Of a stretch of DNA of 64,000 nt, positions 39,893-53,997 are shown one piece after another. The stretch spans positions 143,656 through 207,655 of the IMG/VR virus record IMGVR_UViG_3300020474_000001, one strand, 5' to 3'. A model generated the notes under the pieces. It had not been told where the DNA came from. It saw nothing but the letters and a program-made list of their open reading frames with translations, and searched no databases. The number at the start of each line of letters is the position of its first letter. Position 1 is the stretch's first letter. The translations under genes and the position numbers were made by a program.

Positions 39893-40084
39893 CTAGTCAA
39901 GGAGAACAGCAGCGTGATCGTTAGCGAAGCGGCGAGCGTTACAGGCAGCGATCTGCCATGCGGGACGCCCTGCTGAGGGTTCAGGGAACGCTGCGGAAAT
40001 GGCAGCATCGACGCCCTGGTGGATGGAGCGTTCAACCCATACGTGGGAACGATCAGAGAGGGAGCAAGCGGGAGAGAAGGGCAT
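39893..40084 (-). CDS. Early hypothetical protein
   Basis: 63-aa ORF with pyrimidine-rich leader, in series with its neighbours. Confidence 0.5.
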   Translation of the reverse strand: MPFSPACSLSDRSHVWVERSIHQGVDAAISAAFPEPSAGRPAWQIAACNARRFANDHAAVLLD

Positions 40085-40142
40085 TGGAAGAACGGGGGGA
40101 GAGATACATGGGGGCGACGATGCCCCCGCTGTGTTGTGGTGC

Positions 40143-40361
40143 TTAGGGGAACATCAAGTCGGTAAAGCGCTCGGAGTGCCATGCCCGCAACTCGCCTAGG
40201 TCGATTCGCTCGCCCATCAGGCGTCCGTAGTCGATGGCGAACTGCTGTAGAAGGCAAAGTTCAGGATTAACAGGGTCCCAGACATAGCGAACTGCCTCTG
40301 GAAAGGAGATGGTGCCATTGGCATCAGCGGTGGGCATTGGTTTCGTTTGAACTAAACCCAT
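40143..40361 (-). CDS. Early hypothetical protein
   Basis: 72-aa ORF downstream of the palindromic promoter at 40397. Confidence 0.6.
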   Translation of the reverse strand: MGLVQTKPMPTADANGTISFPEAVRYVWDPVNPELCLLQQFAIDYGRLMGERIDLGELRAWHSERFTDLMFP

Positions 40362-40396
40362 AATCGCCGAGATCTCAGGAGAAATCTATAGGCACT

Positions 40397-40418
40397 GTGC
40401 CAGTTTGCCAACTGGTTT
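40397..40418. promoter_or_regulatory. Early palindromic element (first of about 15 copies)
   Basis: GTGCCAGT-N6-ACTGGTTT. Other copies at 40598, 41415, 41587, 42708, 43142, 43293, 43316, 43459, 45375, 47043, 47446, 49875, 51635, 54335 and 59734. Confidence 0.75.
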
Positions 40419-40483
40419 TGACTGGTTTTGAAATGTTAAGAGTTGTGAAATATTCGCGATTCTGCCTCTCGGTGCGCTACACT

Positions 40484-40558
40484 ATGGGAGACAACCAAAG
40501 GAGGGGTGAGGTAGCCCTGATGACGCCAACGGTCGCCACTCCCCCTGCAATCAATTAA
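40484..40558 (+). ncRNA. Repeated module copy 1: hairpin RNA / mini-ORF MTPTVATPPAIN
   Basis: -10 TACACT at 40478; GA-GGGG-tgaggtag-CCCT-GA hairpin; ATG 40520 to TAA 40558. Confidence 0.5.
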
Positions 40559-40615
40559 GTATATCATTTTGTTACAAAATCCCTGTCAATGGGTTGTGTG
40601 CCACTATGGCGGGTG

Positions 40616-41356
40616 TCACACCCCGGCATGCTGTTGCTTATATGGTTTCAAAAATGCGGCGTTAAGTTTTACTTTAGCGTTAAGATTCGACTCCTTTGAC
40701 TGACCGCCGTGCAGCAACAGTGCAAAGGGACCATCCATGAAACAGCGTTCTTCGTGGCGGTACTCGACACCGTCAATTGGCAGATTCAGTTCTGCCGCTT
40801 CTGCAATATCCTGCACGACCTTTACATAGCGAGGGAACCTGCCAGCATCAATTAATGCATCATATCTGCCGCCATAAGATGCTGTCATATAGAAATTATC
40901 AGGCAAAATAACACTGCGGAACAAGTGCAACGACTTAGAGTAGCAATAGAATTTAAGACCTGGCATTCTCTTGGCGACCTTAATCCATGCTTTTAAATAC
41001 TCAATATTGAAAAAATCACCAGACTCATGTATACGAATGCGAGTATACTTACGGCGGCGCTTCTTTAACTCTACCTGAATCGATTGATAGATTAACTCCT
41101 CAATATTGTCACTAGCATTAATTAAATCAAAATTATGCTTTCGTGCATCATAAACTGCAGGATATTGTGCTTCAGCACGGGCAGCGAAACAAGTGAATTC
41201 AGTGTTATCACCACGCACTAGATTGCGCTTGCCGCTGTTAACAACTGCCCATGCCCTACACTTATCAGCACCGGGACAGGTTCTACCCGCAGGCAGGTTG
41301 AAAATCAAGGTGTCGGGGTGCAGTTTAGCGTTGCCAGCGGAGAACTTAAGAAGCAT
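40616..41356 (-). CDS. GP88-like Cys-rich (radical-SAM-related) protein; start probably MLLKFS at 41356
   Basis: FNLPAGRTCPGADKC, CFAARAEAQYP, RIRIHESGDF and FYCYSK motifs. Confidence 0.7.
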   Translation of the reverse strand: MLLKFSAGNAKLHPDTLIFNLPAGRTCPGADKCRAWAVVNSGKRNLVRGDNTEFTCFAARAEAQYPAVYDARKHNFDLINASDNIEELIYQSIQVELKKRRRKYTRIRIHESGDFFNIEYLKAWIKVAKRMPGLKFYCYSKSLHLFRSVILPDNFYMTASYGGRYDALIDAGRFPRYVKVVQDIAEAAELNLPIDGVEYRHEERCFMDGPFALLLHGGQSKESNLNAKVKLNAAFLKPYKQQHAGV

Positions 41357-41501
41357 GGATCTGAGGTCGATTGATACCAGTATTGCCGGGATTCGCATGC
41401 ATGCTGGGGTCATTGTGCCACTATGCCAACTGGTTTGAAACGTTACAAGATGTTAAAGGTTCGTGAATCTGCCGCACTTCCCCCATCCGATACGCTATGA
41501 T

Positions 41502-41575
41502 GTGGGAACAACAGAAGGAGGGGCAGGGCAGCCCTGATGACGAAAAAAGGCGACACTCACCCTGCAACGAAATAA
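41502..41575 (+). ncRNA. Repeated module copy 2: hairpin RNA / mini-ORF MTKKGDTHPATK
   Basis: -10 TATGAT at 41496; GA-GGGG-cagggcag-CCCT-GA hairpin; ATG 41537 to TAA 41575. Confidence 0.5.
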
Positions 41576-41644
41576 TCATAAGATATGTGACACTTTATGA
41601 ACTGTCACAGTGCCACTTTTATATGTGGTTTTATTACATAATTG

Positions 41645-41702
41645 TATTTTATGGCAGGGTAAGTGGCGATCGTTGTCGTCTTCGGTGCTACCTCACACCT
41701 CA
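41645..41702 (-). ncRNA. Repeated module copy 4 (inverted; AAG in place of ATG)
   Basis: Minus strand gaGGTGtgaggtagCACCgaagacgacaacgatcgccacttaccctgccataaaat; extended -10 TGCTAAGAT near 41750. Confidence 0.5.
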
Positions 41703-41834
41703 ATAAATTGTAACAATCAGAGCATAATGGTGTTTCCCAACTGATCGTATCTTAGCACAGCAGGAGCAGATCCGTGACCCACTCCGTAACATAATGAAAT
41801 ATTATCACTTTGCCAGCATAGAGTTTGAGTGATA

Positions 41835-42059
41835 TTATTCTTCCTCCTCCTCTACTTTTACGACCTTGAGTTTACCTGCGGCAATAAGATCCAACAGCAT
41901 ACCAGTCGATCCCTTCAAAATACCGTCTCCGTCAATACGCAGACACTGAAATTCTTTGGCAATGTCATCTACAATGTCCGGCGTTATTTCCCCACAACGG
42001 ATGGCATATACTCGTCTTGTATGCTCGTCGTTGATGTCAAGACCCAAATAGTTTCTCAT
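41835..42059 (-). CDS. Early hypothetical protein
   Basis: 74-aa ORF with a CATC-rich leader. Confidence 0.6.
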   Translation of the reverse strand: MRNYLGLDINDEHTRRVYAIRCGEITPDIVDDIAKEFQCLRIDGDGILKGSTGMLLDLIAAGKLKVVKVEEEEE

Positions 42060-42110
42060 GATGATGAAGATGAAGATGATGTTAGCGAAGGTGATGATTG
42101 TGAAGGTGAT

Positions 42111-42347
42111 TCAATACTGTGGATCAATGAACATAACAGTGCAGGATCCACGCGGACGAAGAATAATGGTTTCGCCACATTCTTCTCGGTCACATTTCAC
42201 TCCAGATAATCCTATTGCTTCCTTACATGCTAGGACAATCTGTCGATCAGTGGCACAATCTGAGAGACTAATTGTCTCCCGATCACACCAACTGTAGTTT
42301 GCTTCACCACCGAATGTGTCAGTGTACTCAACCTTAAAGTTCTGCAT
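42111..42347 (-). CDS. Early hypothetical protein (VEYTDTFGGEANYSW motif)
   Basis: Clean ORF; motif recalled from phage early proteins. Confidence 0.7.
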   Translation of the reverse strand: MQNFKVEYTDTFGGEANYSWCDRETISLSDCATDRQIVLACKEAIGLSGVKCDREECGETIILRPRGSCTVMFIDPQY

Positions 42348-42385
42348 GATTCAAAAAAAGAATAAAGTTTGCGGGTAAAATCTTA

Positions 42386-42649
42386 TCAGGTGTGAGTGCT
42401 ACCATCAGGTAACATGCAACCGTGAAGACCACAATTTGGCAAAATACCTTCGATGATGACACTGTAGGTGCCATTATGATGGTTTCCTTGCACATCTTCC
42501 TCCACCATTAACCCCTGCATAAGTTCAACAACACTCTTGCCTGTTTGTATGCTCCACATAGAAAACTTTGCGAGTTGCTGATAAGTCAGAACCTGGAAGT
42601 GATCACCCAGGGTTCCATCAGATTCGAGAAGTGGTGCTCTGTAACGCAT
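42386..42649 (-). CDS. Early hypothetical protein
   Basis: Downstream of palindrome 42708 and a TTGATA-17-CATACT promoter. Confidence 0.65.
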   Translation of the reverse strand: MRYRAPLLESDGTLGDHFQVLTYQQLAKFSMWSIQTGKSVVELMQGLMVEEDVQGNHHNGTYSVIIEGILPNCGLHGCMLPDGSTHT

Positions 42650-42738
42650 TTGGTTGGTTGCGATTGATATAAGTATGGGTCAGAGTGGACAACTTATCAA
42701 CCTCAGAGTGACAGTTTGCCAAGTGTCCACTAATGTTA

Positions 42739-43083
42739 TCAAGCGATTGCCCTTTCTATCATTTTAATAATAAGTTCACTTGGCGCTACAATATCATTAA
42801 CTACGCTTTCTTCCCCCGTTGCTTCTAAGGGAACACAAGTTAAGTGCATCTTCCAATCATATTTTCTATTGTTGAAGAACAACATAGAATAATCTACAGC
42901 ATCGACAATATCAGCACCGATAACAGCAAGGGATTTTGTATTCTTTTCTTTGCTAACTTTCCATTCTTTGACAGGTTCCATACCTTCGCCGTCGAGAACA
43001 TCAAACGCAACAAGATTCCAACCTGCATCATCAAGTTTGCGAATAATCTTCCGGGCGTTGCTGCATGTCTTGGAGATTGCCAT
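42739..43083 (-). CDS. Early hypothetical protein (start probably MAISK)
   Basis: ORF 42739-43104; leader and promoter geometry from palindrome 43142 favour the downstream ATG. Confidence 0.6.
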   Translation of the reverse strand: MAISKTCSNARKIIRKLDDAGWNLVAFDVLDGEGMEPVKEWKVSKEKNTKSLAVIGADIVDAVDYSMLFFNNRKYDWKMHLTCVPLEATGEESVVNDIVAPSELIIKMIERAIA

Positions 43084-43199
43084 GGGGTTGATGTAACTGA
43101 ACATATAATCATCGAGATCTCAGGACCAATCAATACCAGCTGTGACAGTTCACCAAGTGTCCACCGATGCCCTCAGAGGCACCTAGGAGGCGCTATAAT

Positions 43200-43272
43200 A
43201 TAAACAAATCAGAAGAGAGGTGGGGTAACCTCGATGACAACAAATATCGACACTACTCCTGCCATAAAATAA
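43200..43272 (+). ncRNA. Repeated module copy 3: hairpin RNA / mini-ORF MTTNIDTTPAIK
   Basis: TATAAT at 43194, 29 nt after palindrome 43142-43164; GA-GAGG-tggggtaa-CCTC-GA hairpin; ATG 43234 to TAA 43272. Confidence 0.55.
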
Positions 43273-43585
43273 TTATATCAAAATGTAACAATGTGCCAGT
43301 TTGCCAAGTGTCACAGTGCCAGTTCATAAACTGTCCACTCGGTCCTACTGCCTCCCTCCCGTGCTCCACCCTTCCACTGTAGGGGCTGCTGCCCGCTGCT
43401 GCTGTATAAACCACTACGATTTTATAAATTGTCACAAAGACACATAAAGCACTGGCACTGGACAGTTCTCGAAGTGTCCACTGTGTGAAAATCGCGACCT
43501 TATGAATTTTTATGGCGGGGGTGCTTGACAAAACGGCGATCGTGTGATAACATGCTGCCCAAGATCACAAGGTCTCAGAGGGTTT

Positions 43586-43626
43586 CATAAGACTTTACAT
43601 AAGACTTTACATAAGACTTTACATAA
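43586..43626. repeat. 12-bp tandem repeat CATAAGACTTTA x3.4
   Basis: Direct reading of the sequence. Confidence 0.9.
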
Positions 43627-43752
43627 CAATTCAAAATATAAACACTACTTATATTAGATATAAGAAAAACAAATACATCATCCCTTAGCAGACAAATACA
43701 TACATGTCAAGAGATAAGTTACAAAATTTAAGATAATTTTTGTTACATATTA

Positions 43753-43782
43753 TTTTCCACAATTCCACAGAGTTATTCCACA
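43753..43782 (+). repeat. Three TTCCACA (DnaA-box-like) 9-mers after an AT-rich tract
   Basis: TTTTCCACA 43753, AATTCCACA 43761 and TATTCCACA 43774. Confidence 0.6.
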
Positions 43783-44066
43783 AGATGATGATTATGAAGA
43801 TGATGATGATAATGAAGATGATATGTATGCCCGTGAAGATGATACTCTAGATGCTTCGTAGATACTCTGTAGCACCTTCCTAGACACTACTGAGTGCATT
43901 TGAATAAAAAACGAAAGTATATTTATTTAACCATTTTTTATATGTTTTTGCACTATTTTGTAGGTAATAATGCTCAAATATATGACTGAAGATGACATTT
44001 AGTCTTTTCTCCATCACGGGACTGTCATAAATGCCCTGGTGGTCATGCTGCTGCTGAAGATGACAT

Positions 44067-44094
44067 AAAAAAAGGAGAGTATTAACTACTCTCC
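44067..44094 (-). terminator. Intrinsic terminator
   Basis: GGAGAGTA-TTAAC-TACTCTCC with a minus-strand T7 tail, after the His-rich gene. Confidence 0.8.
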
Positions 44095-44112
44095 ATATAT
44101 TATGCTTAATCA

Positions 44113-44355
44113 TCAATGAAAGTGAGTTTTTATTGTATAGTGATAAGATCTAATACCATGATGTTTGTGACCATCTCCGTGCTTATGTTTGTGCTTATGA
44201 GTAATACCTGATTTGAAATGAGTATGCCAATGATTGTGCTTAATTACATGAACATGATAATGTTTATGATGTCCATGTCCATGATGTTTAGTATGAGCAA
44301 ATGCTGGGGCAGTTGTAATCAGCAGACCAGCAGTGAGAAAGAGAAAAGATTTCAT
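44113..44355 (-). CDS. Secreted His-rich peptide
   Basis: Signal peptide MKSFLFLTAGLLITTAPAFA followed by a 60-aa mature part with 23 His. Confidence 0.75.
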   Translation of the reverse strand: MKSFLFLTAGLLITTAPAFAHTKHHGHGHHKHYHVHVIKHNHWHTHFKSGITHKHKHKHGDGHKHHGIRSYHYTIKTHFH

Positions 44356-44360
44356 GAGAA

Positions 44361-44585
44361 TTAGTCGAGGTGAGAGGGATCAAAGTCTTTGAGATCTGGT
44401 GCTTGGAATTGTAACTTAAATCCAAGACTTTCAATTACACTAATATGGTGACGACATAAGATCTTTGTATTAGTTAAACAGCATAATTTTTCTGCTAATG
44501 TATTAGCTGGATATGCCATAGTTTTACCATAAAAAGTTTTAATGACATAGGATGCAATACCATTATCGGGAGATTGTGTGGTCAT
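44361..44585 (-). CDS. Early hypothetical protein (YGKTMAYPAN motif)
   Basis: GGAGGT RBS; clean ORF. Confidence 0.7.
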   Translation of the reverse strand: MTTQSPDNGIASYVIKTFYGKTMAYPANTLAEKLCCLTNTKILCRHHISVIESLGFKLQFQAPDLKDFDPSHLD

Positions 44586-44732
44586 GAGTTTACCTCCTGA
44601 TGAAAACGTGGAAGGTAGCGATAGTCAATAGATTTGATACACCAACCTTGCGAGAATGTTCATTCAACCTCCGCCAGTTCTTGTTGTTGTTGCATAAGTT
44701 GACTCGATCTTTAAGTTCTTTGAGTGTGTAAT

Positions 44733-44960
44733 TCATAATCCTTTACCATAAACAAGTTGAGCAACAGCATTAGAATTGGCATCAGGACGACACCATTTAA
44801 TTGGCATACTTTTCGGATTGTTTGGTATGCCCCAGATCATCATATCTGGTTCTGAACGACATAAACGATAGGCATGATTGATGTCCGTGCAATATACACA
44901 ACCGTGTTCATCAAATGTTGACCATGATGCCGGTTGAATTGCAAATGAATAAGTAGGCAT
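44733..44960 (-). CDS. Early hypothetical protein (start MPTYSF)
   Basis: GAGGT RBS before ATG at 44960. Confidence 0.65.
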   Translation of the reverse strand: MPTYSFAIQPASWSTFDEHGCVYCTDINHAYRLCRSEPDMMIWGIPNNPKSMPIKWCRPDANSNAVAQLVYGKGL

Positions 44961-44971
44961 GAGTTTACCTC

Positions 44972-45310
44972 TCAATTAAGATACAGGAATGAACCATAAG
45001 GATCAACCATCTCTGGATCCTTGAGCAATTCAGTTATCATATAACGAACAATCTTTGCAGGTGCTTTGAATGATGCTGGTTTGTAACATTCTCCAGTGTT
45101 CTTATCAACAAACATGAACACACCGTTATTGTTAAAACTATCATCAGCATAAACCCTGAATTGATTCAGTTTGATATATTTCTTACCTACACTATATTCT
45201 AACTTAGAATATGAACTATGTCCAGATTCAATAAAATTAACTTTCCATTGATTGTTTACAAGTTCAATCAGTTCTTGAACCTGTTGCTCGACTGTGACTG
45301 TTGTGGTCAT
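44972..45310 (-). CDS. Early protein, paralog family A (GKKYIKL...FVDKNTGECYKPAS)
   Basis: Strong palindrome-linked promoter and GGAGG leader. Confidence 0.75.
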   Translation of the reverse strand: MTTTVTVEQQVQELIELVNNQWKVNFIESGHSSYSKLEYSVGKKYIKLNQFRVYADDSFNNNGVFMFVDKNTGECYKPASFKAPAKIVRYMITELLKDPEMVDPYGSFLYLN

Positions 45311-45401
45311 GATCGGTGGTCCTCCGTTTGACTCCCTTATATTAAAGTGTTGTCAGACCAATTCTATAGTGGGTGTGACACTGCTGCAACTGGCACATGC
45401 C

Positions 45402-45842
45402 CTATCGTCTTCGTAGATAATTACCACGCCAATCTGCCCTTGCTAACATATCAATACGCTGTGCAATAATTGTCACATTAAATAAAATCTTTTTTGTCCG
45501 CCTTGGTTGCTGGTAGGGTGATACTGCATACACTGCCCCAGTAGTTTTATCAATAAAACAATGAATATAACTTTCTCCGGTACTTTTGTTCTTACACATA
45601 ATCAAATGATGCAATGTTTCACTCTGGCTATCAACAACAAACTCCAAATCTGCAAGATTTTCATTAGTAAACCTCTTAGATGTTTTCTGAGTATGTGCAA
45701 GCGCAGCATTAAGAACATCTTTATTCAGTGCATCAATCAATTCAAAACAACATGCTTTGATCTTCAAATAGATGGTATTCTTGGCATCCATTTGAATAGA
45801 CATTTGATCGAATGTAGCAGTAGTTGACATGACTAATAACAC
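45402..45842 (-). CDS. Early protein, paralog family A (IHCFIDKTTGAVY...ADWRGNYL)
   Basis: Shares the H/F-x-F-[IV]-D-K-x-T-G-x-x-Y motif with 44972-45310. Confidence 0.7.
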   Translation of the reverse strand: MLLVMSTTATFDQMSIQMDAKNTIYLKIKACCFELIDALNKDVLNAALAHTQKTSKRFTNENLADLEFVVDSQSETLHHLIMCKNKSTGESYIHCFIDKTTGAVYAVSPYQQPRRTKKILFNVTIIAQRIDMLARADWRGNYLRRR

Positions 45843-46984
45843 AAATAAGGGTGATCTTTATCTAGGACACAGTTGTCAGTTGCTGTCAAAAGTGTTTTGC
45901 ACGGATAATACTCATCCATGTCTGGATCGTATATCGTGGGAGTGCAATTTAGTTGTTCTGGTGTCATGCCCAGGAGCATCACCAGCAGATCCTGGTAGGT
46001 TGAACAAGCATAAGGAGTGCCACTCATGACTTATCTCCCATCACTTCCTGGTGTTTAACCGCATTGTATTTTTGGGTCAATTTACACATACAATCGTATG
46101 CAAGTTGTGCTCGTTTCTTATACTCATCGTGCTCATTCCTGAACTTGATGATCTCTTGTCGTAGCAATTCGGATTGGGACATGAACTTAAACTCCAATGA
46201 AGTGGGCAAAAAATGAAAACTAATCCTTGTCGTATTTCTTGAGATCTTGAATCACATGATGCAACATTCTCAAACCTCCTTTAGAATATCCTACACAAAA
46301 GTGTGGAGTTTTTTCAGAATCTTGAGAAGGATCATAAGGATCAACTGAATAGTCAATACTATTCAACACTGTTATCACCTCTTCGATCTTTTCCAGATAA
46401 AGATCGACTTCTTCCGATGACACTGAGATCATGATACTTTGCTCCCGTAATCAGCGTAGTGATGTTGATGTCCGTGAATATCGAAATACACAATTTCTGC
46501 GTATCCGTATTCTTCACTTAAACTGAGGCAAATGTCATAGGCACGATCTAAATCTTGCCGACAATTCTCATTTTCAAATGGTGCAGATGGGCATTTGACG
46601 ATGTAATCAATCATGAATCAATCCCTGTCAGAAATGTTGAAATGACCAGTCGTGATCTTCTCCTGGGCAGCAAGACGATTGGCACGCAGTTTCTTTAACT
46701 CATCCTGAATCGACTGTTTACAGATGTCGGCAAGGTCTGGATCACTTGCCCAGAACCCTTCTTCCTTATAGTATTTCATTTGCTCATGCTCCCTGATATT
46801 GATTGTGGTGCTCTTCAAAAACTTTCTCGACTTCATGCCATTGAACAGCAGAGATCTCCCCGTCGATCTGAGATTCAACGTAGTCCTTAGCAGACTCCCA
46901 GTCTGCGTCTGTATCATCCAAGAATGAGCGCAATCCTTGAAGTGCTTGCTCTAACTCTGAAAAAACGGGTATTGGTGTGGTCAT
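45833..46984 (-). CDS. Run of about six small early hypothetical ORFs (45833, 46024, 46220, 46429, 46618-46779, 46784)
   Basis: Tightly packed, stop/start-overlapping minus-strand ORFs downstream of the palindrome 47043 promoter. Confidence 0.6.
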
Positions 46985-47061
46985 TTGTTGCTCCGGTTGA
47001 CTTCTGAATAATAACGGATTTAAGGTCGAATCTACACTGCTTGTGACAGTGCTTCAAGTGG

Positions 47062-47380
47062 TCAATACCCTGCTAGTGCCCTCCCACCGCGTCCAGCAGC
47101 GCCTGCCTGACGGTTCAACGATGCAGACTGACCAGCAGCGCGACCATCCGCAGCAGCACTGCCGTGAGCAGCAGTGCCTCTGTAAGAAGAAAATTTTTGC
47201 GTTGCCAATACGATTGCAACTGCCTTAGCATCTGCCTCGCTGACAGGGTTATTTTCCTGCTTCATGTCACGCAAACGATTTCCGATTGTCTGTGCCATTG
47301 CTTTACGAAAGTTCTGCTTCCATCCATTTGATGATCTGGGCGCGGATCTTAGCGAGTTTGTCCTGAGTGGATGCAGTCAT
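47062..47380 (-). pseudogene. Internally deleted, frameshifted DUF2786-like gene
   Basis: ATG 47380 gives MTASTQDKLAKIRAQ...stop. The +1 frame continues ...SNGWKQNFRKAMAQTIGNRLRDMK...SLNRQAG...RALAGY, resembling the family's C-terminus as recalled. Confidence 0.5.
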
Positions 47381-47484
47381 GATCGGTGGTCCATCCGGTT
47401 GACATAATCAATATATTCAACCCTAAGATCAATACAAGTGTCGGTGTGACACTTATACATCTGGCACTAGCTAAGATTTAAGAC

Positions 47485-47551
47485 AAAAAAAGTGCGCCCA
47501 AATGCGCACTTAGAAGGTCAAACGGAAAGATCGGAGGGACCATCTCCGACT
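47485..47551 (-). ncRNA. Candidate trans-acting small RNA (about 67 nt) with its own terminator
   Basis: TGC-TATACT extended -10 at 47557-47562; 5' hairpin UCGGAG/CUCCGA; CU-rich linker; terminator AAGTGCGC/GCGCACTT plus U7. Confidence 0.6.
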
Positions 47552-47747
47552 CAGACAGTATAGCAGGACACGGGAATGGGCGAGTGACCTGGACTATCAC
47601 TTAGAGAGAAAATCATGTGGTAAGCATAGTTATCTTTGAGATTGTCAAGTTCTTCTTCAGTCATAGGTTTCAGCAGCGAAAGTGATTAGGATCAGAACAG
47701 ACATTAGCATTGCTGGTGATAACAACAATACCAAAAGTTTCAACTCT

Positions 47748-48976
47748 TCAAAAGTCATTCTCCTTCCAATAGATCTGCCAATGGTTTACCAAATAGTTTG
47801 GTTTCTTGTTGCATAAGACATACAATCTTTGCACGATGTCTCGGGTTGCAGAGATCCAAACCATGCTCTTTTGCCAGTTCAACTCGTCGTTCACGGAAAG
47901 ATTTTTCTCTGGACCCCATCGAAATAGAAAAGCAGTGTGTAAACTAAATGTCGAAAAAAGAGGGGAAGGTATCAACTTCCCCCCGATCTCTTCCGTGTAA
48001 CCTGTGTGACACCTGGGACTTACCGCAAGCGTGCCCAGGATTTAGAATTTCATTATTTAACCTCCTCGATGATCTTATTCAAACGCCGTTTCATACGAAT
48101 CTTTCCAAAATGATTACGACAAAATTCATTTAGTTTAGAAAGATCTGGATCTATTTTACTTGCTTGTGCGCCAACTTTCTGTGAAACTTTACGGAATCTA
48201 ACTCCGAAAAATTCTTCAATTTCACTGAGTCGCACATCATTACATTCACTCATAGCGAGAATGACTGCATGAATAGCATCACATTCATCGGGAGTGAGTT
48301 TGGTCTGGTCCTCGGTAGGGATGAACATAATCTGATAGGATTGCTCCTCGGTGTTGCACTAATTGTGCCAACTCATCATGTGGTGTGCAAGGGGTGTGTT
48401 TTGATAACCACACACTTCATTCTGAATCCTGTGTCTCATGATACTTTCCATCTGGACCCGGAACCATGCTGCCAGATCGAAGGTTAAGCACCTTTGTTGG
48501 TTCTTTCTGAATGATATATTTGCCGTCGCTCTTTTGGTTTTTCAAAAATTTTGCAACTTTATCACCATCAAAATGCACAAATACTGTCTCATATGCAGAT
48601 CCACCATGTTCAGCGGTGTATCTACGGTTCACAAATTGCATCCACGATTTTCCTTTCCGATATTTTCTTTTGCTAAAAACTAAAACATCAGAACGAATCT
48701 CAGGATCAATTTCCCAAGTAAGATGACTGGAAGCAGACATAAATTCAATCAGTCAGTCAACCCAGGTGCTAATTCATTGATTTCTTCTCTTTCGATGCGA
48801 TCGAATGGAATGATAGAGTGGAGACGAGACATTGCATCACCGTAGATTTTCTCATCTTCTGGTGATAATTCTTTACCATATTGAGTCATAGCATTCCACA
48901 CTAATGCCCAATATGCAGTTGGCATGTATTCTCGCACGATTCCCTGGGTAGAAATGGACTGGATGGACTCGATCAT
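47748..48976 (-). CDS. Small early hypothetical ORFs (47748, 48053, 48417, 48749)
   Basis: Consecutive minus-strand ORFs of 75-107 aa. Confidence 0.55.
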
Positions 48977-49030
48977 GATGAAAAAAACGAAAATAAAACT
49001 GCCCCAGAAAAATCTGGGGCATTTGTGTAA

Positions 49031-49807
49031 TCAAAACAGAGATTTCTTATTTTCTATCACATAATCAATGCCATGCTTATGAACACAATAAGCAAGTTTT
49101 TCTGCTTCTTCATAAGTTAAGAACGGATCGATGACATTTTCCTGACAAAGTTTCCAAATTTCAGGACCGTTCAAATTGATAGAATACCTCACAGCATTAT
49201 CAGTTTTAATGTTCTTGTGTGCATACTCACCGAAAATCCTGAAGAACGCATCACGATTGCAGGGGAGTTGGTCAATCATCACATTATTTTCATGTTTTTT
49301 AGTCATCATAAGATCCCACACCACAATCCCCATACGAGTAAAAGATTGAAGCAATACTTTATCTCTTCGACTATGCTGGCGATTCTTCAGCATCTTTAGG
49401 CAAATTTGACGATCATTATCATTTGTTACCGGGAAACCTTCCCAATACTTCCATGCTTCAAGCGACAAATCAATCATATTTAGAGAAATGTTTCTCCTAT
49501 GTGTTGTTGGGAAAAGAGAATTAGAACGGTCAATAGTGAATGGATATTTTTTCTCCCATTCACTGAACAAAGGCACACTTGAAATATAGTAGTCAATTTC
49601 TGGATCTTCGATCTCGTATGGCGAAAGATCTACTTTGTTATTGAAGAGGCACTCCTGAAGGGAGATTCCAGTTTGATTTGCAAGTTGACGATAAATGTCA
49701 AATGCTGTAACATTTTGTTTGACAAGATCCCAATCAATCTTGGTGAATGATTTTGGTGTGGTGTCGGGTGTGGGGGCGGTGATGCTAGATTGAGTGAAGA
49801 ATGTCAC
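49031..49807 (-). CDS. Hypothetical protein, 258 aa
   Basis: Long ORF downstream of palindrome 49875 and a TAAAAT -10 box 31 nt away. Confidence 0.7.
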   Translation of the reverse strand: MTFFTQSSITAPTPDTTPKSFTKIDWDLVKQNVTAFDIYRQLANQTGISLQECLFNNKVDLSPYEIEDPEIDYYISSVPLFSEWEKKYPFTIDRSNSLFPTTHRRNISLNMIDLSLEAWKYWEGFPVTNDNDRQICLKMLKNRQHSRRDKVLLQSFTRMGIVVWDLMMTKKHENNVMIDQLPCNRDAFFRIFGEYAHKNIKTDNAVRYSINLNGPEIWKLCQENVIDPFLTYEEAEKLAYCVHKHGIDYVIENKKSLF

Positions 49808-49869: not shown

Positions 49870-50947
49870 TCACTGTGACAGTGGATCAAGTGGTTTCTTG
49901 GTCAATCTGTTCAGGAGAAACTTTTCAAACCATTCACCGTAATTCTGTTCCAAATTGTTTCTCACTTTAGTATAATCAGTCGTATAATATACTTGTTCTG
50001 TCTCTGAGTAATCCACAATATAGATATTATCCTTCATTCTAAAAATTGTCGCATATTTCTCATATACACCACGAATCGGTGTATAAACAAAATACTCAAT
50101 TTCTTCGGCTAATGATGCCGAAGGTTGCACATATTGGAATGGGATCATGAGAACATCCGCTGCATGTTAGTCTGGTCACGGATCATAATCCGCAAAAGAT
50201 CTTGATCTCTTGGAGAAACAGTGTGAAAGTTCTGTTTCATCTGACTGACACTATTCTCTAGTGCGTGTTTAATATGAACACGCTGAATTGGAGACAAACT
50301 GAGAATGAATGTTTTCTTGGTCATTAGATCACATGCGATGGGTTGTTGCGTGAGATGTGCTATGAATGATGATCAAAATACTGATCAAAGAGATGATTGT
50401 ATGGGTCATTTGTTCCCCAAAATTGTGTCAATTCCGTCACCAATACGCTCTCCAAAAGACTCTGATTGGTCCTCTGGTGCAACAACTTCAGCAGCGGAGA
50501 ATAGTAGTTTGGATAAGTAGGATCTTGAGGGTTCATGATTCCAGATGACAAATCCAAAGAACAGAGCAACAGCGAAGCGCATGTAGAATTTGATCCAAAT
50601 TGAGCGGAGATGTGAGTATGAAAGTGACGATTTTCTGCTCATAGGAGAACCTTCAAACTTTGAATCGTCTTTAATAGGATACCTTGATTCTTTGAGTTGG
50701 TCTCCCTCAATTTCTTATATCTTTCTGAAGGAGTCATTTCAATATCTTCATGTTCAAATGTATTCGTAAGGGCAACATCAAGTTGCTTGACAACATTCTC
50801 TACAATCTTAATATACTTTTGTTGCTGCCCCATTTGACAGTTCAAATCCTGAAGACCATCAATGGTATGATCCCATTGTGAATCTTCTGGTGCAAATTGT
50901 TTGACTAATTCGATTGTCTTTTCAAGATCATCGATAGACAGTTTCAT
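49870..50947 (-). CDS. Small hypothetical ORFs (49870, 50406 with a membrane segment, 50639)
   Basis: Operon-like packing. Confidence 0.55.
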
Positions 50948-51641
50948 GACTTTTGATGGGTTGTTGATTAAATTGATTAGTTTTAGAGTGATTCAACCAT
51001 CGTTCGATCTCTTCGCGGTCTATGTATCTGCTAGAAGTCGTTTTCAAAAATTTGTTTAGTTTTTCAGTATCAACTTTGTCCTGTCTATACTTCATCCAAT
51101 TACTCAGTGATGCTTTCTCGATATTCTTATTTGTCACTTCTTTTGAAAACACGGACATTTTCAAATGCGGTGTCTTGCCTCTAAGGATGCTTCCTATACT
51201 GGTGTTTTGCTGCGTATAAGTCATTAAATAATCACCAGTAAATTCAATGCGGTTGAACATCTGCTCTCTTTGTTCATCGCAAGAGATATTGCCCCTTAGT
51301 TGGTGACTATGGGTGTAAACATCTCCAGTCTGATGATTTATCAAGCAATGCACTTCTTTATTGCCCTTTTCTCTAATTAGTGGATGATGCGCCATAATCT
51401 TGATATATTTCAGACTAGGAACTTCAGCATAGAATTTAAGGTCGTTCTTACCAGTTTTGTTGATGTAATCTTCGTTCAAGATTTCAGCATATTTGTTGGC
51501 ATAATTCCAACAAATTGTAGTATTGATGAACTTAGTTTGTTCATCTTGCATTTTACAATTTAATGACATAGGATTCACCAGATTGATACAATAGTCTATT
51601 CTGATTGAGTGTAGATACAAAGTCAAGGGTGAGTGTGACAA
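50928..51641 (-). CDS. Early protein, paralog family A with C-terminal extension
   Basis: LKYIKI...VHCLINHQTGDVY...IEFTGDYL matches family A motifs. Confidence 0.65.
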   Translation of the reverse strand: MSHSPLTLYLHSIRIDYCINLVNPMSLNCKMQDEQTKFINTTICWNYANKYAEILNEDYINKTGKNDLKFYAEVPSLKYIKIMAHHPLIREKGNKEVHCLINHQTGDVYTHSHQLRGNISCDEQREQMFNRIEFTGDYLMTYTQQNTSIGSILRGKTPHLKMSVFSKEVTNKNIEKASLSNWMKYRQDKVDTEKLNKFLKTTSSRYIDREEIERWLNHSKTNQFNQQPIKSHETVYR

Positions 51642-52384
51642 TCATCCAACCGTCACCCATGAGAATAACTCAACTTCTCGTTTCTTATTAAATGGTGCAA
51701 AGAGACGTTCACTAATTCTATCTTTAGTAATGAAAATAGAAGTATAGTTTTTGATTGGTTTCCCATCTGCATAAAGAACATAAGAATCTTTGATGTGATT
51801 ATTGCGCTTTTTTATTAACCTAATTTTATGGGGAGTAGTGAGATAGCAGGAACGAAGAAATACATCTAATCTTTTTAAGTTCTGATTGCGAATCAGTAAC
51901 CATCCATGATTGTTGCTTGAAAAGTGATCTGGAACACTGGTAGACCTAATTTCAATCATATTATTTCCCACACGGGCAAGAACCTGCCCGTGCGACGACC
52001 AAATCGAACAAGAATTGGAGTGATCATATTCTATTTTATATCTACCCCTATAATGTTGAGTAGATGTTTGCTCTTCGATAGCGTTGAATATGTCATCAAT
52101 ATCATGATCACCGAGATCTTCGCAATCGATTTTGTTCCAATCAATCAATCTATGCCTCATAGCAATTTACCTTGGTTGATAGGTTGGCAGGTATACGCAT
52201 CGCCCAGGAATGTGTCTGCGATGATCAGAGTGTGTGTTCCTGATTTCAATTTGCATTTATCGACCGCATTGGGATTGAAAAAGACAAACTGACCAGTAAT
52301 ACAAACTAATGCCATCGTAATTGCCCCAAATGAAAATGGAACAAGTGAATCAATCAAATCGTCGTCGGGTAGAAAATTTTTCAT
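51642..52384 (-). CDS. Hypothetical ORFs 51642-52160 and 52157-52384 (membrane protein)
   Basis: ATGA-overlapping ORFs. Confidence 0.6.
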
Positions 52385-52419: not shown

Positions 52420-53841
52420 TCAGGCAAGAGTTTCATACACTAACTCGCCAATTTGTTGCCCCATTTCTCTACCACGAAGGTCTCCATCTTGAATATGGAT
52501 TCCACCGGGAAGTCGAGACCATCCAGCATCATCAGCAGCATCTTGAAGAGTGTCCCAGCGAAGGGTGATTGGTTCACCATTATAATCCTCAAAGACCAGA
52601 TCTTGAGTTGTATATTCTCCTACCAAATGACGCTTGCCATCACCATAGTGATCGTAACCTTTTGACACACCATCATAATACTCATCGCTGCCATAAAATT
52701 TCGACAATACTTCAGCAGCAGCACCACTAAATGTGCTGTGTCCTGATACAAACTCGGGGAAGGATGGTGTGACAAATGTAGGAGATTGATACGGTTGCCA
52801 ATCAGAACCTGTGATAGTATCAATGCCCTTGTTTGGACCTTTCCATCCTTGAATTTCATCATCAGCAAACAGTTTACGAATTGCTGTTTGTGGACGAACA
52901 CCATAACCTTTTTCGCCCCAGTGATACTTACTATCCCATGCTGCAATGCCAGCATCCATCAATGCAGCATTAAGTAGGAAAGTTGACTTCACATCATCTT
53001 TCAAATCGTTGCCGTATTTGAGACAAAGGTCCATATTGATCTCATTCCAATGCCCAGGAGGTGTGCTTGACATAGGGCCATCCGCCCAGTATTCTGCGGT
53101 TGTTTTATCAAATGGAGTCATATTTGCCTGAACATCAACAACTTCCTGGAATTGCTTTACGAAAGCATTATGTTCCGTAGAAACATTTCCCAAAGCATCA
53201 ACATACATGTCGTCACTTCCATACCTAGGTGGTGCTGGAGCACGGAATTGATCACCACTTTCCATTACTGCGGGACGAACATACATGTGCCCAGGTGATA
53301 GAGCACCAGGAACGTAGTAGGATTCTTCATTTTCAGTTGCGATGGGCGTGCCAATGTCGTTCACCACAACTCCCGTGGGCACTTTTGGCGGTTGCCAGGC
53401 GTTAATATCACCCGAATCTGAAGGATAAAACTCTATACTGTTATCAATTCCATCATTTTTACGGGATCTATGTGCCATTTTCGCTACTTTGCGACCCAAC
53501 TTGTATTCTTTTCTGGTAAGATCGGGCGCAATTTCTTTTAATTGATCGTCCAGAAACTCCTTCTGATCAGGATACAAGCGCTTGAGCATGAAAATACCAG
53601 CAGCAGCAACGATGTCGCTCTGGTCATGTTTCTGAAACTTTCGTGCTCTGTAGGATCTTGCGAATCCTTCTTCCTTCTTATCGAACGCCGCCAAAGCGTC
53701 GTTCATTGCCATGCTGGTTAGGAACAGCGATCGAGAAATAGTCGTTGGTGCCGGGGGGTTCTTTCTGATTTGCTGGAGTTGCAAGTCAATGACTTGCATT
53801 GCGACAGATGGTTGTTGACCAGTGATTGGATCGATAGACAT
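52420..53841 (-). CDS. Vanadium-dependent haloperoxidase / PAP2-superfamily enzyme (start probably MSIDP at 53841)
   Basis: Active-site motifs WDSKY...VRP, PSFPEFVSGHSTFS and SRLPGGIH, plus TPPGHW. The GTG at 53982 leaves no room for the divergent promoter. Confidence 0.85.
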   Translation of the reverse strand: MSIDPITGQQPSVAMQVIDLQLQQIRKNPPAPTTISRSLFLTSMAMNDALAAFDKKEEGFARSYRARKFQKHDQSDIVAAAGIFMLKRLYPDQKEFLDDQLKEIAPDLTRKEYKLGRKVAKMAHRSRKNDGIDNSIEFYPSDSGDINAWQPPKVPTGVVVNDIGTPIATENEESYYVPGALSPGHMYVRPAVMESGDQFRAPAPPRYGSDDMYVDALGNVSTEHNAFVKQFQEVVDVQANMTPFDKTTAEYWADGPMSSTPPGHWNEINMDLCLKYGNDLKDDVKSTFLLNAALMDAGIAAWDSKYHWGEKGYGVRPQTAIRKLFADDEIQGWKGPNKGIDTITGSDWQPYQSPTFVTPSFPEFVSGHSTFSGAAAEVLSKFYGSDEYYDGVSKGYDHYGDGKRHLVGEYTTQDLVFEDYNGEPITLRWDTLQDAADDAGWSRLPGGIHIQDGDLRGREMGQQIGELVYETLA

Positions 53842-53997
53842 AACAAATGGTATAGAAAGGTCTGGGGAACTTGCCCCACCACAAGTATGCCTGTGTATAG
53901 ACCGATATGGATAATTGTGGTCCAGTTCATGAGCTGTCCACTGCACCTTGACACTCGATGCTTTCCGTCCCAAGATCGCCACATCACATTCTTTACA

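What the first reader, a model, noticed from the sequence alone, without database searches (positions are those of the whole stretch)
47485..47562. Candidate sRNA complementary to the shared 5' leader of three early genes
Seen: the minus-strand unit AGUCGGAGAUGGUCCCUCCGAUCUUUCCGUUUGACCUUCU plus terminator has its own extended -10 (TGC-TATACT), a 6-bp 5' hairpin, an unpaired CU-rich seed and a U7 terminator. The seed UCCGUUUGAC is a perfect 10-nt complement of GUCAAACGGA in the leader of ORF 45310 (GUCAAACGGAGGACCACCGAUC-AUG). It is a 9/10 complement of GUCAACCGGA in the leaders of ORFs 47380 and 46984. UGGUCC and GUCGG additionally pair, in antiparallel order, with GGACCA and CCGAU next to the AUG, and CCUCCG can pair with the SD. 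Inference: a phage trans-acting sRNA that shuts off translation of the strongest early transcripts.
Basis: partly seen in the sequence, partly recalled or inferred. Interest (0 to 1): 0.75.

Follow-up and report, generated by a model that had tools for sequence, protein, structure and literature searches.

The report
Candidate anti-leader small RNA in cyanophage
An uncultured T4-like cyanophage carries a conserved, non-coding unit of about 67 bases (promoter, hairpin, open stretch, terminator) whose open stretch is an inverted copy of the start of neighbouring early-gene messages, so it is a credible but unproven antisense RNA regulator of the phage's own early genes.

Summary
On the minus strand, 47565 to 47485 reads TGC-TATACT, 5 nt, AGUC, a 7-bp hairpin, an open stretch containing UCCGUUUGAC, then an 8-bp GC-rich terminator and U7. 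GTCAAMCGGA occurs four times in 64 kb against 0.1 expected: three gene leaders plus this one inverted copy.

New evidence:
- The unit is present in four related metagenomic lineages. Hairpin plus seed show 0 of 37 variable columns, against 20 of 81 in the adjoining promoter. No reading frame is conserved across it.
- Its -10/start layout (TANNNT-N5-AGTC) matches that of 23 early-gene leaders in this phage, Bellamy, Sf-CH5 and metagenomic relatives. An own early-type promoter is therefore plausible.
- The complementarity exists because the unit is an inverted copy of the leader module.
- Only the 45310 leader is a strong predicted target (ddG -16.7, best of 91 starts). 46984 is moderate (-13.1) and 47380 weak (-8.2).

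There is no transcript evidence, no Rfam match and no homologue in cultured phages. Verdict: a plausible phage antisense sRNA of the 3'UTR-with-own-promoter type.

The parts
47557..47565 (-). Extended -10 element TG-C-TATACT of the candidate RNA
   Evidence: Sequence. TATACT is invariant and TGn is kept (TGC or TGT) in 4 lineages, while 11 of the 25 columns upstream vary. It lies exactly 5 nt before AGTC, the same spacing as in 23 early leaders. No -35 match.
47485..47551 (-). Predicted 67-nt RNA, from the A of AGUCGGAG to the end of the U7 run
   Evidence: Fold. 6 of 68 columns vary, against 20 of 81 in the adjacent promoter (p = 0.016). No conserved ORF: a 1-nt linker indel shifts the frame, and the stop codon of the upstream gene differs between lineages.
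47530..47550 (-). 5' hairpin GUCGGAG / AUGGUCC loop / CUCCGAU. The loop is complementary to GGACCA beside the AUG of leaders 45310 and 47380.
   Evidence: 0 of 22 columns vary in 4 lineages.
47512..47529 (-). Single-stranded linker plus seed (core UCCGUUUGAC at 47517-47526), an inverted copy of the leader module
   Evidence: Seed plus the following 5 nt: 0 of 15 columns vary. The 2-3 nt linker is the only variable spot (UUU, CU or GU).
47485..47511 (-). Intrinsic terminator (8-bp stem, 6-nt loop, U7), shared with the upstream operon
   Evidence: Changes between lineages fall only in the loop, in the closing A-U to G-U pair and in the U-run length.
45311..45344 (-). Leader of gene 45310 (DUF7717): -10 TAATAT, N5, AGUCAAACGGAGGACCACCGAUC-AUG. 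Best predicted mRNA target.
   Evidence: Perfect 10-nt seed match. Cofold ddG -16.7 kcal/mol, rank 1 of 91 starts, z about -4.3. Pfam DUF7717.
46985..47013 (-). Leader of gene 46984 (66 aa): TATTAT, N5, AGUCAACCGGAGCAACAA-AUG. Moderate predicted target.
   Evidence: 9/10 seed match, plus AGAAG:CUUCU after a 1-nt bulge. ddG -13.1.
47381..47415 (-). Leader of ORF 47380: TATATT, N5, UGUCAACCGGAUGGACCACCGAUC-AUG. Weak predicted trans target, possible cis partner in read-through RNA.
   Evidence: 9/10 seed match. ddG -8.2, rank 7 of 91. The read-through RNA folds with the anti-leader paired to this leader. The gene is a remnant of a 238-aa DUF2786 gene.
47979..48002 (-). IG1 leader-like element GGUUACACGGAAGAGAUCGGGGGG. 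It is the longest complement of the candidate RNA, and its G-run is the 5' arm of the IG1 terminator.
   Evidence: Best duplex on the whole minus strand: -27.9 kcal/mol against -22.8 for the next, background -7.3 +/- 3.4. 22 of 26 identity with the + strand of the unit. Present in L035, L036 and L041-L044.
47954..47984 (-). IG1 terminator (9-bp stem, U6), 40 nt upstream of the 54-aa gene, with no recognisable promoter in between
   Evidence: conserved in relatives.
47551..47919 (-). Upstream operon whose 3' UTR contains the unit: 54-aa gene (47755-47919), 33-aa hydrophobic peptide (47657-47758), and a 37-aa remnant of a DUF7326 gene (47551-47664)
   Evidence: ATGA-type overlaps between the ORFs. 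Homologues are in L035, L036, L037 and L041. The 65-aa DUF7326 gene is intact in L035 and cut down to 5 codons in L041-L044 and L113.
47426..47467 (-). Conserved upstream promoter-region motif (GTGCCAG..TGTCACAC..TTGTAT) of the 47380 unit. Together with the terminator it forms a PeSL-like terminator-promoter-SD cassette.
   Evidence: Repeat family D5, with copies at 45355-45396, 47023-47064 and 51615-51656. The same layout is seen upstream of the DUF7717 homologues in Bellamy and Sf-CH5.

Best explanation
The unit is a small non-coding antisense RNA gene that arose by inverted duplication of the early-gene leader module.

Transcription (inferred): it is transcribed on the gene strand in two ways. 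One is as the 3' UTR of the upstream 54-aa operon. The other, probably, is from its own -10-only early-type promoter (TGnTATACT, start at AGUC). Both end at the shared intrinsic terminator, giving an RNA of about 67 nt.

Action (inferred): the open stretch (UCCGUUUGAC plus flanks) and the hairpin loop (AUGGUCC) pair with RNAs that carry the leader module AGUCAAACGGAGG-ACCA. That module is the extreme 5' end plus the Shine-Dalgarno sequence. Pairing would block ribosome loading and/or create a double-stranded cleavage site.

Predicted partners in this genome, strongest first: the IG1 element at the head of its own operon, the 45310 (DUF7717) leader, then 46984 and, weakly, 47380.

Shown: the anatomy, conservation, non-coding nature, shared promoter layout, and the ranking of predicted partners. 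Inferred: the transcript itself, the pairing in vivo, and the direction of the effect.
For: - The anatomy and fold match a promoter-hairpin-seed-terminator unit.
- Four lineages carry it: the window, L035, L041-L044 and L113. Hairpin plus seed show 0 of 37 variable columns, against 20 of 81 in the adjacent promoter region (p = 3e-4). The -10 shows 0 of 6. Terminator changes fall only in the loop, the closing pair and the U-run length.
- Third-codon identity in the flanking genes is only 54-86% for most pairs. The block is therefore not simply young.
- Three different deletions of the upstream DUF7326 gene all spare the -10 and everything downstream of it.
- It is non-coding: the linker indel shifts the only internal AUG frame.
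- TANNNT lies exactly 5 nt before [A/T]GTCAA in 23 leader-type sites across this phage, Bellamy, Sf-CH5 and the metagenomic relatives. Other offsets occur only twice. The unit has TATACT-N5-AGTCGG.
- 45310 is rank 1 of 91 starts (ddG -16.7). The IG1 element is the best duplex on the whole strand.
Against: - There is no transcript evidence of any kind.
- The unit lies in the 3' UTR of an operon and would be conserved to some degree as a terminator module.
- No -35 element is present, and the region upstream of the -10 is not conserved.
- The complementarity is a by-product of common descent with the leaders, so it does not by itself argue for pairing.
- Leaders 47380 and 46984 keep a central C:U mismatch in all lineages, and no compensatory change was seen anywhere because the seed is invariant.
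- A perfect-match leader is documented only in the window's genome.
- In the L041 and L113 variants, the minimum-energy fold partly buries the seed.
- The RNA would be made from the same promoter class as its targets, so a temporal switch is not obvious.
- The sample is four closely related lineages.
Confidence: 0.45

Rival explanations
1. The unit is only a 3' UTR and terminator module with no trans function. Hairpin, spacer and terminator simply end and stabilise the upstream operon's mRNA. The stretch resembles leaders in reverse only because it is a scar of an inverted duplication in a region that shuffles by recombination between terminator-promoter-SD cassettes (PeSL-like).
For: - It sits directly after the upstream ORF and shares the only terminator of that operon.
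- The region is in flux. Both flanking genes are deletion remnants here, gene content between IG1 and IG2 differs among lineages, and synteny with L021, L039 and L040 breaks exactly at the leader GTCAA.
- The intergenic region has the PeSL layout of stem-loop, early promoter, SD and start codon, as described in PMC4122927.
Against: A scar or a mere terminator does not explain three things: 0 of 37 variable columns in hairpin plus open stretch beside variable flanks; an invariant TATACT at the exact early-promoter spacing; and three independent deletions that all stop short of it.
Confidence: 0.25
2. The unit acts in cis within long transcripts, in one of two ways. (a) The anti-leader in the 3' UTR folds back on the IG1 element in the 5' region of the same operon RNA, closing the message and affecting its stability or translation. 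This resembles the 5'-3' fold-back of hok mRNA. (b) In transcripts that read through the terminator, it sequesters the ribosome-binding site of 47380, so that only transcripts started at the gene's own promoter are translated. This resembles phage T4 genes e, soc, 49 and I-TevI.
For: - MFE and centroid folds of the 536-nt operon RNA pair IG1 with IG2.
- The read-through RNA 47553-47360 folds with the anti-leader paired to leader 47380: -64 kcal/mol, z = -3.7.
- IG1 and the unit co-occur in all lineages that carry the operon.
Against: - The terminator is strong (8-bp GC-rich stem, U7-8), so read-through for (b) should be rare.
- Long-range MFE pairings in 500-nt folds are unreliable (z only -1.75 for that RNA).
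- Co-occurrence is not independent evidence, because the whole module travels together.
- The conserved -10 at the promoter spacing is unexplained by a purely cis role.
Confidence: 0.17
3. The unit functions at the DNA level. The IG1 and IG2 inverted repeats (about 26 bp, 450 bp apart here) and the IG2/leader-47380 inverted repeats would be recombination or cassette-boundary sequences, or protein-binding sites, and not RNA signals.
For: The inverted repeats flank a gene cassette of variable content. Several other conserved DNA motifs (GTGCCAG..TGTCACAC) crowd these intergenic regions.
Against: No target-site duplication or empty site was found. The lineages lacking the cassette differ over the whole upstream region, not by a clean insertion. 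Conservation follows RNA features: stems are kept while loops and the linker are free to vary.
Confidence: 0.08

Closest known systems
P1/P7 c4 antisense RNA (immI operon), and P22 sar
   Same: A phage-encoded small RNA on the same strand and in the same gene cluster as its targets. It is complementary through short inverted repeats, not through overlap, and acts on a ribosome-binding region of the phage's own genes. Complementary bases are presented partly in a loop and partly in an open stretch. (c4 is described in review PMC12197685; further details are from my own knowledge.)
   Different: c4 is cut out of a precursor by RNase P and controls lysogenic immunity in a temperate phage. Here the phage is a lytic T4-like cyanophage, the RNA probably has its own promoter and ends at a terminator, and the targets are early-gene leaders. 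There is no sequence or structure similarity. sar is a true overlapping (cis) antisense RNA.
3'UTR sRNAs with their own promoter (type I, such as MicL and DapZ of enterobacteria)
   Same: The promoter lies at or inside the end of the upstream gene, the terminator is shared with that gene's mRNA, and a short seed blocks a target ribosome-binding site (my own knowledge).
   Different: Those are host sRNAs that depend on Hfq and on defined sigma or transcription factors. Here there is no evidence for a chaperone, and the seed derives from an inverted copy of the target leader.
PeSL cassettes of T4-type phages (promoter-early stem-loop; PMC2839356, PMC4122927)
   Same: The terminator at 47511-47490, the early promoter, the SD and the start codon of 47380 form the same composite layout. 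It lies in a hyperplastic region of small ORFs with indels at the cassettes.
   Different: PeSLs are described as recombination and expression cassettes. None is described with an inverted leader copy and a separate -10 upstream of the stem-loop. The promoters here are of the -10-only cyanobacterial kind with a fixed AGTCAA start.
RBS sequestration in long transcripts of phage T4 (genes e, soc, 49, I-TevI), and the fold-back (fbi) of hok mRNA
   Same: An upstream or distal complementary segment on the same RNA can hide a ribosome-binding site or a 5' end (my own knowledge). Folds allow this here.
   Different: In T4 the sequestering arm lies immediately upstream, with no terminator in between. 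Here a strong terminator separates the arms, or, for IG1, the arms are about 450 nt apart.
T4 RegA and RegB (protein-based shut-off of early mRNA translation)
   Same: The proposed outcome is the same: coordinated silencing of early messages through their initiation regions. RegB cuts within the GGAG of early SD sequences (my own knowledge).
   Different: Those are proteins; the agent here would be an RNA. No test was done here.

Membership tests
Trans-acting base-pairing sRNA | Discrete transcript with its own promoter and terminator | tested here: inconclusive
   The terminator is clear. The extended -10 is conserved and at the same spacing to AGTC as 23 early leaders. There is no -35 and there are no expression data.
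Trans-acting base-pairing sRNA | Non-coding | tested here: met
   No ORF is conserved. The internal AUG frame is shifted by the linker indel, and upstream ORFs end at different places in different lineages.
Trans-acting base-pairing sRNA | Accessible, conserved seed complementary to target initiation regions | tested here: met
   The seed is open in the MFE fold of the window and L035 variants. 0 of 15 columns vary. 45310 ranks 1 of 91. Caveat: the seed is partly paired in the L041 and L113 MFE fold.
Trans-acting base-pairing sRNA | Co-variation of seed and target, or demonstrated regulation | not testable with these tools
   The seed is invariant in all four lineages, so no compensatory change can be scored. 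Regulation needs experiments.
Any Rfam family (including the cyanophage motifs wcaG, manA, glnA, PhotoRC, Yfr) | Match to a curated covariance model | tested here: not met
   No hit at gathering score in the 64-kb window. No relevant hit at E <= 1 in 40000-49200.
PeSL cassette (T4-type phages) | Stem-loop followed by an early promoter, SD and start codon, repeated in a hyperplastic region and associated with indels | tested here: met
   Terminator 47511-47490, promoter motif 47467-47410, SD and ATG at 47380. Similar promoter-leader cassettes lie at 45396-45311 and 47064-46985. Indels and gene replacement occur at these cassettes among relatives. This describes the surroundings; it does not explain the inverted leader copy.
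P1/P7 c4-type antisense RNA | Processed from the operon precursor by RNase P; two loop-presented segments pairing with two sites before the target RBS | not tested
   Only the general logic (same strand, inverted-repeat complementarity) is shared. No tRNA-like or RNase P substrate structure was looked for, and there is no sequence similarity.
Cis-encoded (overlapping) antisense RNA | Transcribed from the strand opposite its target | tested here: not met
   The unit and all proposed targets are on the same (minus) strand. No promoter-like site on the + strand reads into the region.

The most novel reading that the evidence does not exclude
The RNA is the hub of an RNA-only early-gene circuit in a T4-like phage.

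- It would be made from an early promoter and also carried on the 3' end of its own operon.
- It would pair with the IG1 element, whose G-run is the 5' arm of the terminator guarding that operon. That pairing could allow read-through (trans-RNA antitermination at an intrinsic terminator, giving positive feedback) or mark the polycistronic RNA for cleavage.
- It would also pair with the 5' end and SD of early messages carrying the AGUCAAACGGAGG leader, shutting them off. This would be an RNA counterpart of RegA/RegB, and a documented case of an sRNA gene born by inverted duplication of its target's leader.
Probability: 0.1. Interest if true: 0.85.

Novelty: new member of a known kind. Interest (0 to 1): 0.5.

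Why it matters
- The 2025 review of phage small RNAs that I read (PMC12197685) lists no trans-acting small RNA from a marine T4-like cyanophage that targets the phage's own genes. The cyanophage RNAs it lists are a cis-antisense RNA (CfrI) and riboswitch-like motifs.
- If real, this unit would show that lytic cyanophages use base-pairing RNAs to tune their own early program.
- It would also give an unusually clear view of how an sRNA gene originates: an early promoter and start site, fused to an inverted copy of the leader it targets, ending at a pre-existing terminator.
- The side result may have wider use for annotating cyanophage transcription units. It is a fixed TANNNT-N5-(A/T)GTCAA layout shared by early leaders of distant cyanomyoviruses, which predicts that early mRNAs start at AGUCAA.
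- If the unit is only a conserved 3' UTR, it is of minor interest.

Tried and rejected
- **Rfam.** No hit at gathering score for the whole window. At E <= 1 for 40000-49200 there was nothing relevant.
- **Cultured phages.** Megablast and blastn of 44900-48400 matched only part of the DUF7717 gene. blastn of the 91-nt unit at E <= 10 gave only chance hits. tblastn of the 78-aa and 54-aa flanking proteins found nothing.
- **IMG/VR pattern scans for the unit.**
  - Exact 22-mers of the seed region and of the hairpin returned only the window's own contig.
  - A degenerate 16-base pattern returned 15 unrelated chance hits.
- **Protein-guided IMG/VR scans.** These gave only L021, whose contig ends at the leader.
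- **Metagenome scan.** It returned an identical Tara contig and a short fragment.
- **Contigs carrying the identical 54-aa protein.** Ten such contigs are 100% identical over 781 nt, so there is no microdiversity signal.
- **RNAduplex with full-length sequences.** This produced meaningless long-loop structures and was discarded. I replaced it with a seed-fragment scan and with cofold ddG values.
- **Generic TANNNT-N4-6-AGTCRR motif.** It is not enriched window-wide (15 found against 10 expected). Only the leader-restricted test is informative.
- **Plus-strand transcript.** Considered and rejected. There is no promoter-like site, no U-run after the hairpin on that strand, and no ORF.
- **Small peptide (MVPPIFPF...).** Considered and rejected, because the frame is not conserved.
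- **Syn9 transcriptome paper (PMC5029184).** It is not held in the library, so published cyanophage start sites could not be compared.

Full report
**Context.**
- The window is part of a 207-kb uncultured viral genome, IMGVR_UViG_3300020474_000001. An identical Tara Oceans contig, CEVS01108930, also exists.
- It is a T4-like cyanomyovirus. The only DNA matches are to Synechococcus and Prochlorococcus myoviruses. The window encodes a gp6-like baseplate protein and a UvsW-like helicase, and nearly all genes are on the minus strand.
- The finding lies in a stretch of small ORFs (about 38-52 kb) of the kind called hyperplastic in T4-type phages.

**Check of the observation.**
- The minus strand reads TG-C-TATACT (47565-47557), GTCTG, then AGUCGGAG-AUGGUCC-CUCCGAU (a 7-bp hairpin, 47550-47530). 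A short linker follows, then UCCGUUUGAC (47526-47517), CUUCU, and the terminator AAGUGCGC-AUUUGG-GCGCACUU with U7 (47511-47485).
- The RNA folds as hairpin, open stretch, terminator (-22.4 kcal/mol, z = -2.8).
- GTCAAMCGGA occurs four times in 64 kb against 0.10 expected. Three copies sit in front of ORFs 45310, 46984 and 47380, and one is inverted inside this unit.

**Nature of the complementarity.** The + strand of the unit (AGAAGGTCAAACGGAAAGATCGGAGGGACCATCTCCGAC) aligns with the leader module (TTAGAAGTCAAACGGAGGACCACCGATC-ATG) and carries an internal 10-nt duplication that creates the hairpin. The unit is thus an inverted copy of a leader, and complementarity to all leader copies follows from descent. 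Its closest relative in the window is not a gene leader. It is a leader-like element in the next intergenic region upstream (IG1, 48002-47979: GGUUACACGGAAGAGAUCGGGGGG). Identity is 22 of 26 with one gap, and the alignment score is 30 against 13 +/- 2 for shuffles. The G-run of that element forms the 5' arm of a second terminator (47984-47960), which stands 40 nt before the 54-aa gene with no recognisable promoter in between.

**Surroundings.**
- The unit follows a three-ORF operon with overlapping stop and start codons. The ORFs are a 54-aa protein, a 33-aa hydrophobic peptide and a 37-aa ORF.
- Relatives show that the 37-aa ORF is a deletion remnant of a 65-aa DUF7326 gene.
- The downstream pair, 47380 (25 aa) plus 47298 (78 aa), is a deleted and frameshifted remnant of a 238-aa DUF2786 gene.
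- The terminator, the following promoter, the SD and the ATG of 47380 form a composite like the PeSL cassettes of T4-type phages (PMC4122927).

**Relatives.**
- No cultured phage has the unit, and no other IMG/VR contig does.
- Through the flanking proteins I recovered metagenomic contigs from three further lineages that carry it: L035, L041-L044 and L113.
- Lineages L021, L039 and L040 have a different gene set upstream of the 238-aa gene and lack both the unit and IG1. Homology with the window breaks exactly at GTCAA of the leader.

**Conservation.**

| Segment (alignment of the four lineages) | Variable columns |
|---|---|
| -10 hexamer | 0 of 6 |
| Hairpin | 0 of 22 |
| Seed plus the following 5 nt | 0 of 15 |
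| 2-column linker | 2 of 2 |
| Terminator | 4 of 23 |
| 25 columns upstream of the -10 | 11 of 25 |
| Promoter region downstream of the terminator | 20 of 81 |
| Leader of 47380 | 1 of 26 |

- All four terminator changes fall in the loop, in the closing pair (A-U to G-U) or in the length of the U-run.
- Hairpin plus seed against the downstream region gives p = 3e-4.
- Third-codon identity in neighbouring genes is 54-86% for most pairs, so the block is not merely recent.
- Three different deletions of the DUF7326 gene all leave the -10 and everything downstream intact.
- No reading frame is conserved across the unit.
- This argues for selection on the sequence of the hairpin and the open stretch, as strong as that on a functional leader.

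**Promoter.**
- In this phage, in Bellamy, in Sf-CH5 and in the metagenomic relatives, every intergenic early leader of the AGTCAA type has a TANNNT hexamer exactly 5 nt upstream. That makes 23 cases, and other offsets occur only twice.
- This predicts -10-only promoters with transcription starting at A/G of AGUCAA, which would suit marine picocyanobacterial hosts (my own knowledge).
- The unit has TATACT-GTCTG-AGTCGG with a TGn extension, which is the same layout. An own early-type promoter is therefore plausible, and the RNA would start AGUCGGAG.
- There is no -35, and there is no transcript evidence.
- In any case the sequence is also present on the 3' end of the operon mRNA. The arrangement resembles 3'UTR sRNAs that have their own promoter and share the terminator.

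**Predicted partners.**
- A scan of the whole minus strand with the open stretch gives IG1 as the best site: -27.9 kcal/mol, against -22.8 for the next and a background of -7.3 +/- 3.4.
- With intramolecular structure included, the ddG is -16.7 for the 45310 leader, which ranks 1 of 91 translation starts (z about -4.3).
- The other ddG values are -14.5 for IG1, -13.1 for 46984 and -8.2 for 47380, the last ranking 7th.
- Leaders 46984 and 47380 keep a C opposite the central U of the seed in every lineage.
- Only two leaders of the GTCAAMCGGA(N)GGACC type exist in the whole 207-kb genome, and both are in this window.
- The possible regulon is therefore local and small, not 'the early genes' at large.

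**Cis alternatives.** The operon RNA 48020-47485 folds, in both the MFE and the centroid structure, with IG1 paired to the unit. A read-through RNA folds with the unit paired to the 47380 leader. Both are thermodynamic predictions only.

**Conclusion.** The feature is real, conserved and non-coding, and it looks like an early-promoter-driven antisense RNA born from an inverted leader copy. I consider a base-pairing role the most likely function (0.45), with 45310 and IG1 as the main partners. A conserved but passive 3' UTR or terminator scar (0.25), a cis fold-back role (0.17) and a DNA-level role (0.08) remain open.

Noticed in passing
window 40485-40563, 41502-41580, 43199-43277 (minus strand) and 41645-41715 (plus strand): Four copies of a ~70-nt repeat (70-81% identical). 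On its reading strand each copy is preceded by a -10-like hexamer (TATACT, GATTAT, TATAAT or CATAAT) and can form a GC-rich stem-loop (GCAGGGGGAGTGGCGACC...GGGCTACCTCACCCCTCC). This may be a second family of small structured RNAs or terminators. There is no Rfam match. The consensus fold is weak, with 3 pairs showing double changes.
   Followed up: partly
window 45339-45344, 47008-47013, 47410-47415; L002, L003, L021, L035, L039-L041, L045, L113: Early-gene leaders of distant cyanomyoviruses (including Bellamy and Sf-CH5) share a fixed layout: TANNNT, 5 nt, (A/T)GTCAA, then the SD. There are 23 cases at offset 5 and 2 at other offsets. This predicts that early mRNAs start at AGUCAA.
   Followed up: partly
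window 45355-45396, 47023-47064, 47426-47467, 51615-51656, and related copies at 40393-40418, 41411-41436, 42703-42731, 43137-43165, 43288-43339, 49870-49898: A repeated motif, GTG(C/A)CAG - TTGNNN - N3 - TGTCAC(AC), lies upstream of the leader-proximal -10. Some copies are palindromic. It could be a second promoter or a regulator-binding site. It is also present upstream of the DUF7717 homologues in Bellamy and Sf-CH5.
   Followed up: partly
window 47303-47380 and 47062-47298 (minus): The 25-aa and 78-aa ORFs are the two ends of a 238-aa DUF2786 (PF10979) gene that is intact in relatives. This genome has an internal deletion of about 135 codons with a frameshift.
   Followed up: yes
window 47551-47664 (minus): The 37-aa ORF is a remnant of a 65-aa DUF7326 gene that is intact in L035. 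Other lineages (L041-L044, L113) have independently deleted it down to 5 codons. As a result, gene callers there read a spurious 45-aa ORF through the RNA unit and its terminator.
   Followed up: yes
window 47954-47984 and 49000-49021 (minus): Strong terminator-like hairpins stand only 20-40 nt in front of the next start codon (47919 and 48976), with no room for a promoter. The downstream genes would therefore depend on read-through.
   Followed up: no
window 47657-47758 (minus): A 33-aa hydrophobic, single-helix peptide (MTFEELKLLVLLLSPAMLMSVLILITFAAETYD) overlaps both neighbouring ORFs, inside the operon that is flanked by the IG1 and IG2 inverted repeats. In L035 its ATG is replaced by TTG.
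   Followed up: no
window 44113-44355 (minus): An 80-aa protein with a signal-peptide-like N-terminus and a very histidine-rich body (HTKHHGHGHHKHYHVH...HKHKHKHGDGHKHHG). It may be a metal-binding secreted protein.
   Followed up: no
window 43583-43630: Four tandem copies of a 12-nt unit (TTACATAAGACT on the + strand) in the intergenic region upstream of ORF 43531.
   Followed up: no
window 52420-53982 (minus); 14378-21559 and 23885-35635 (minus): A 520-aa protein has a vanadium-chloroperoxidase-like second helical-bundle domain (PF22778, E = 8e-9). There are also two giant ORFs of 2393 and 3916 aa next to the baseplate genes.
   Followed up: no
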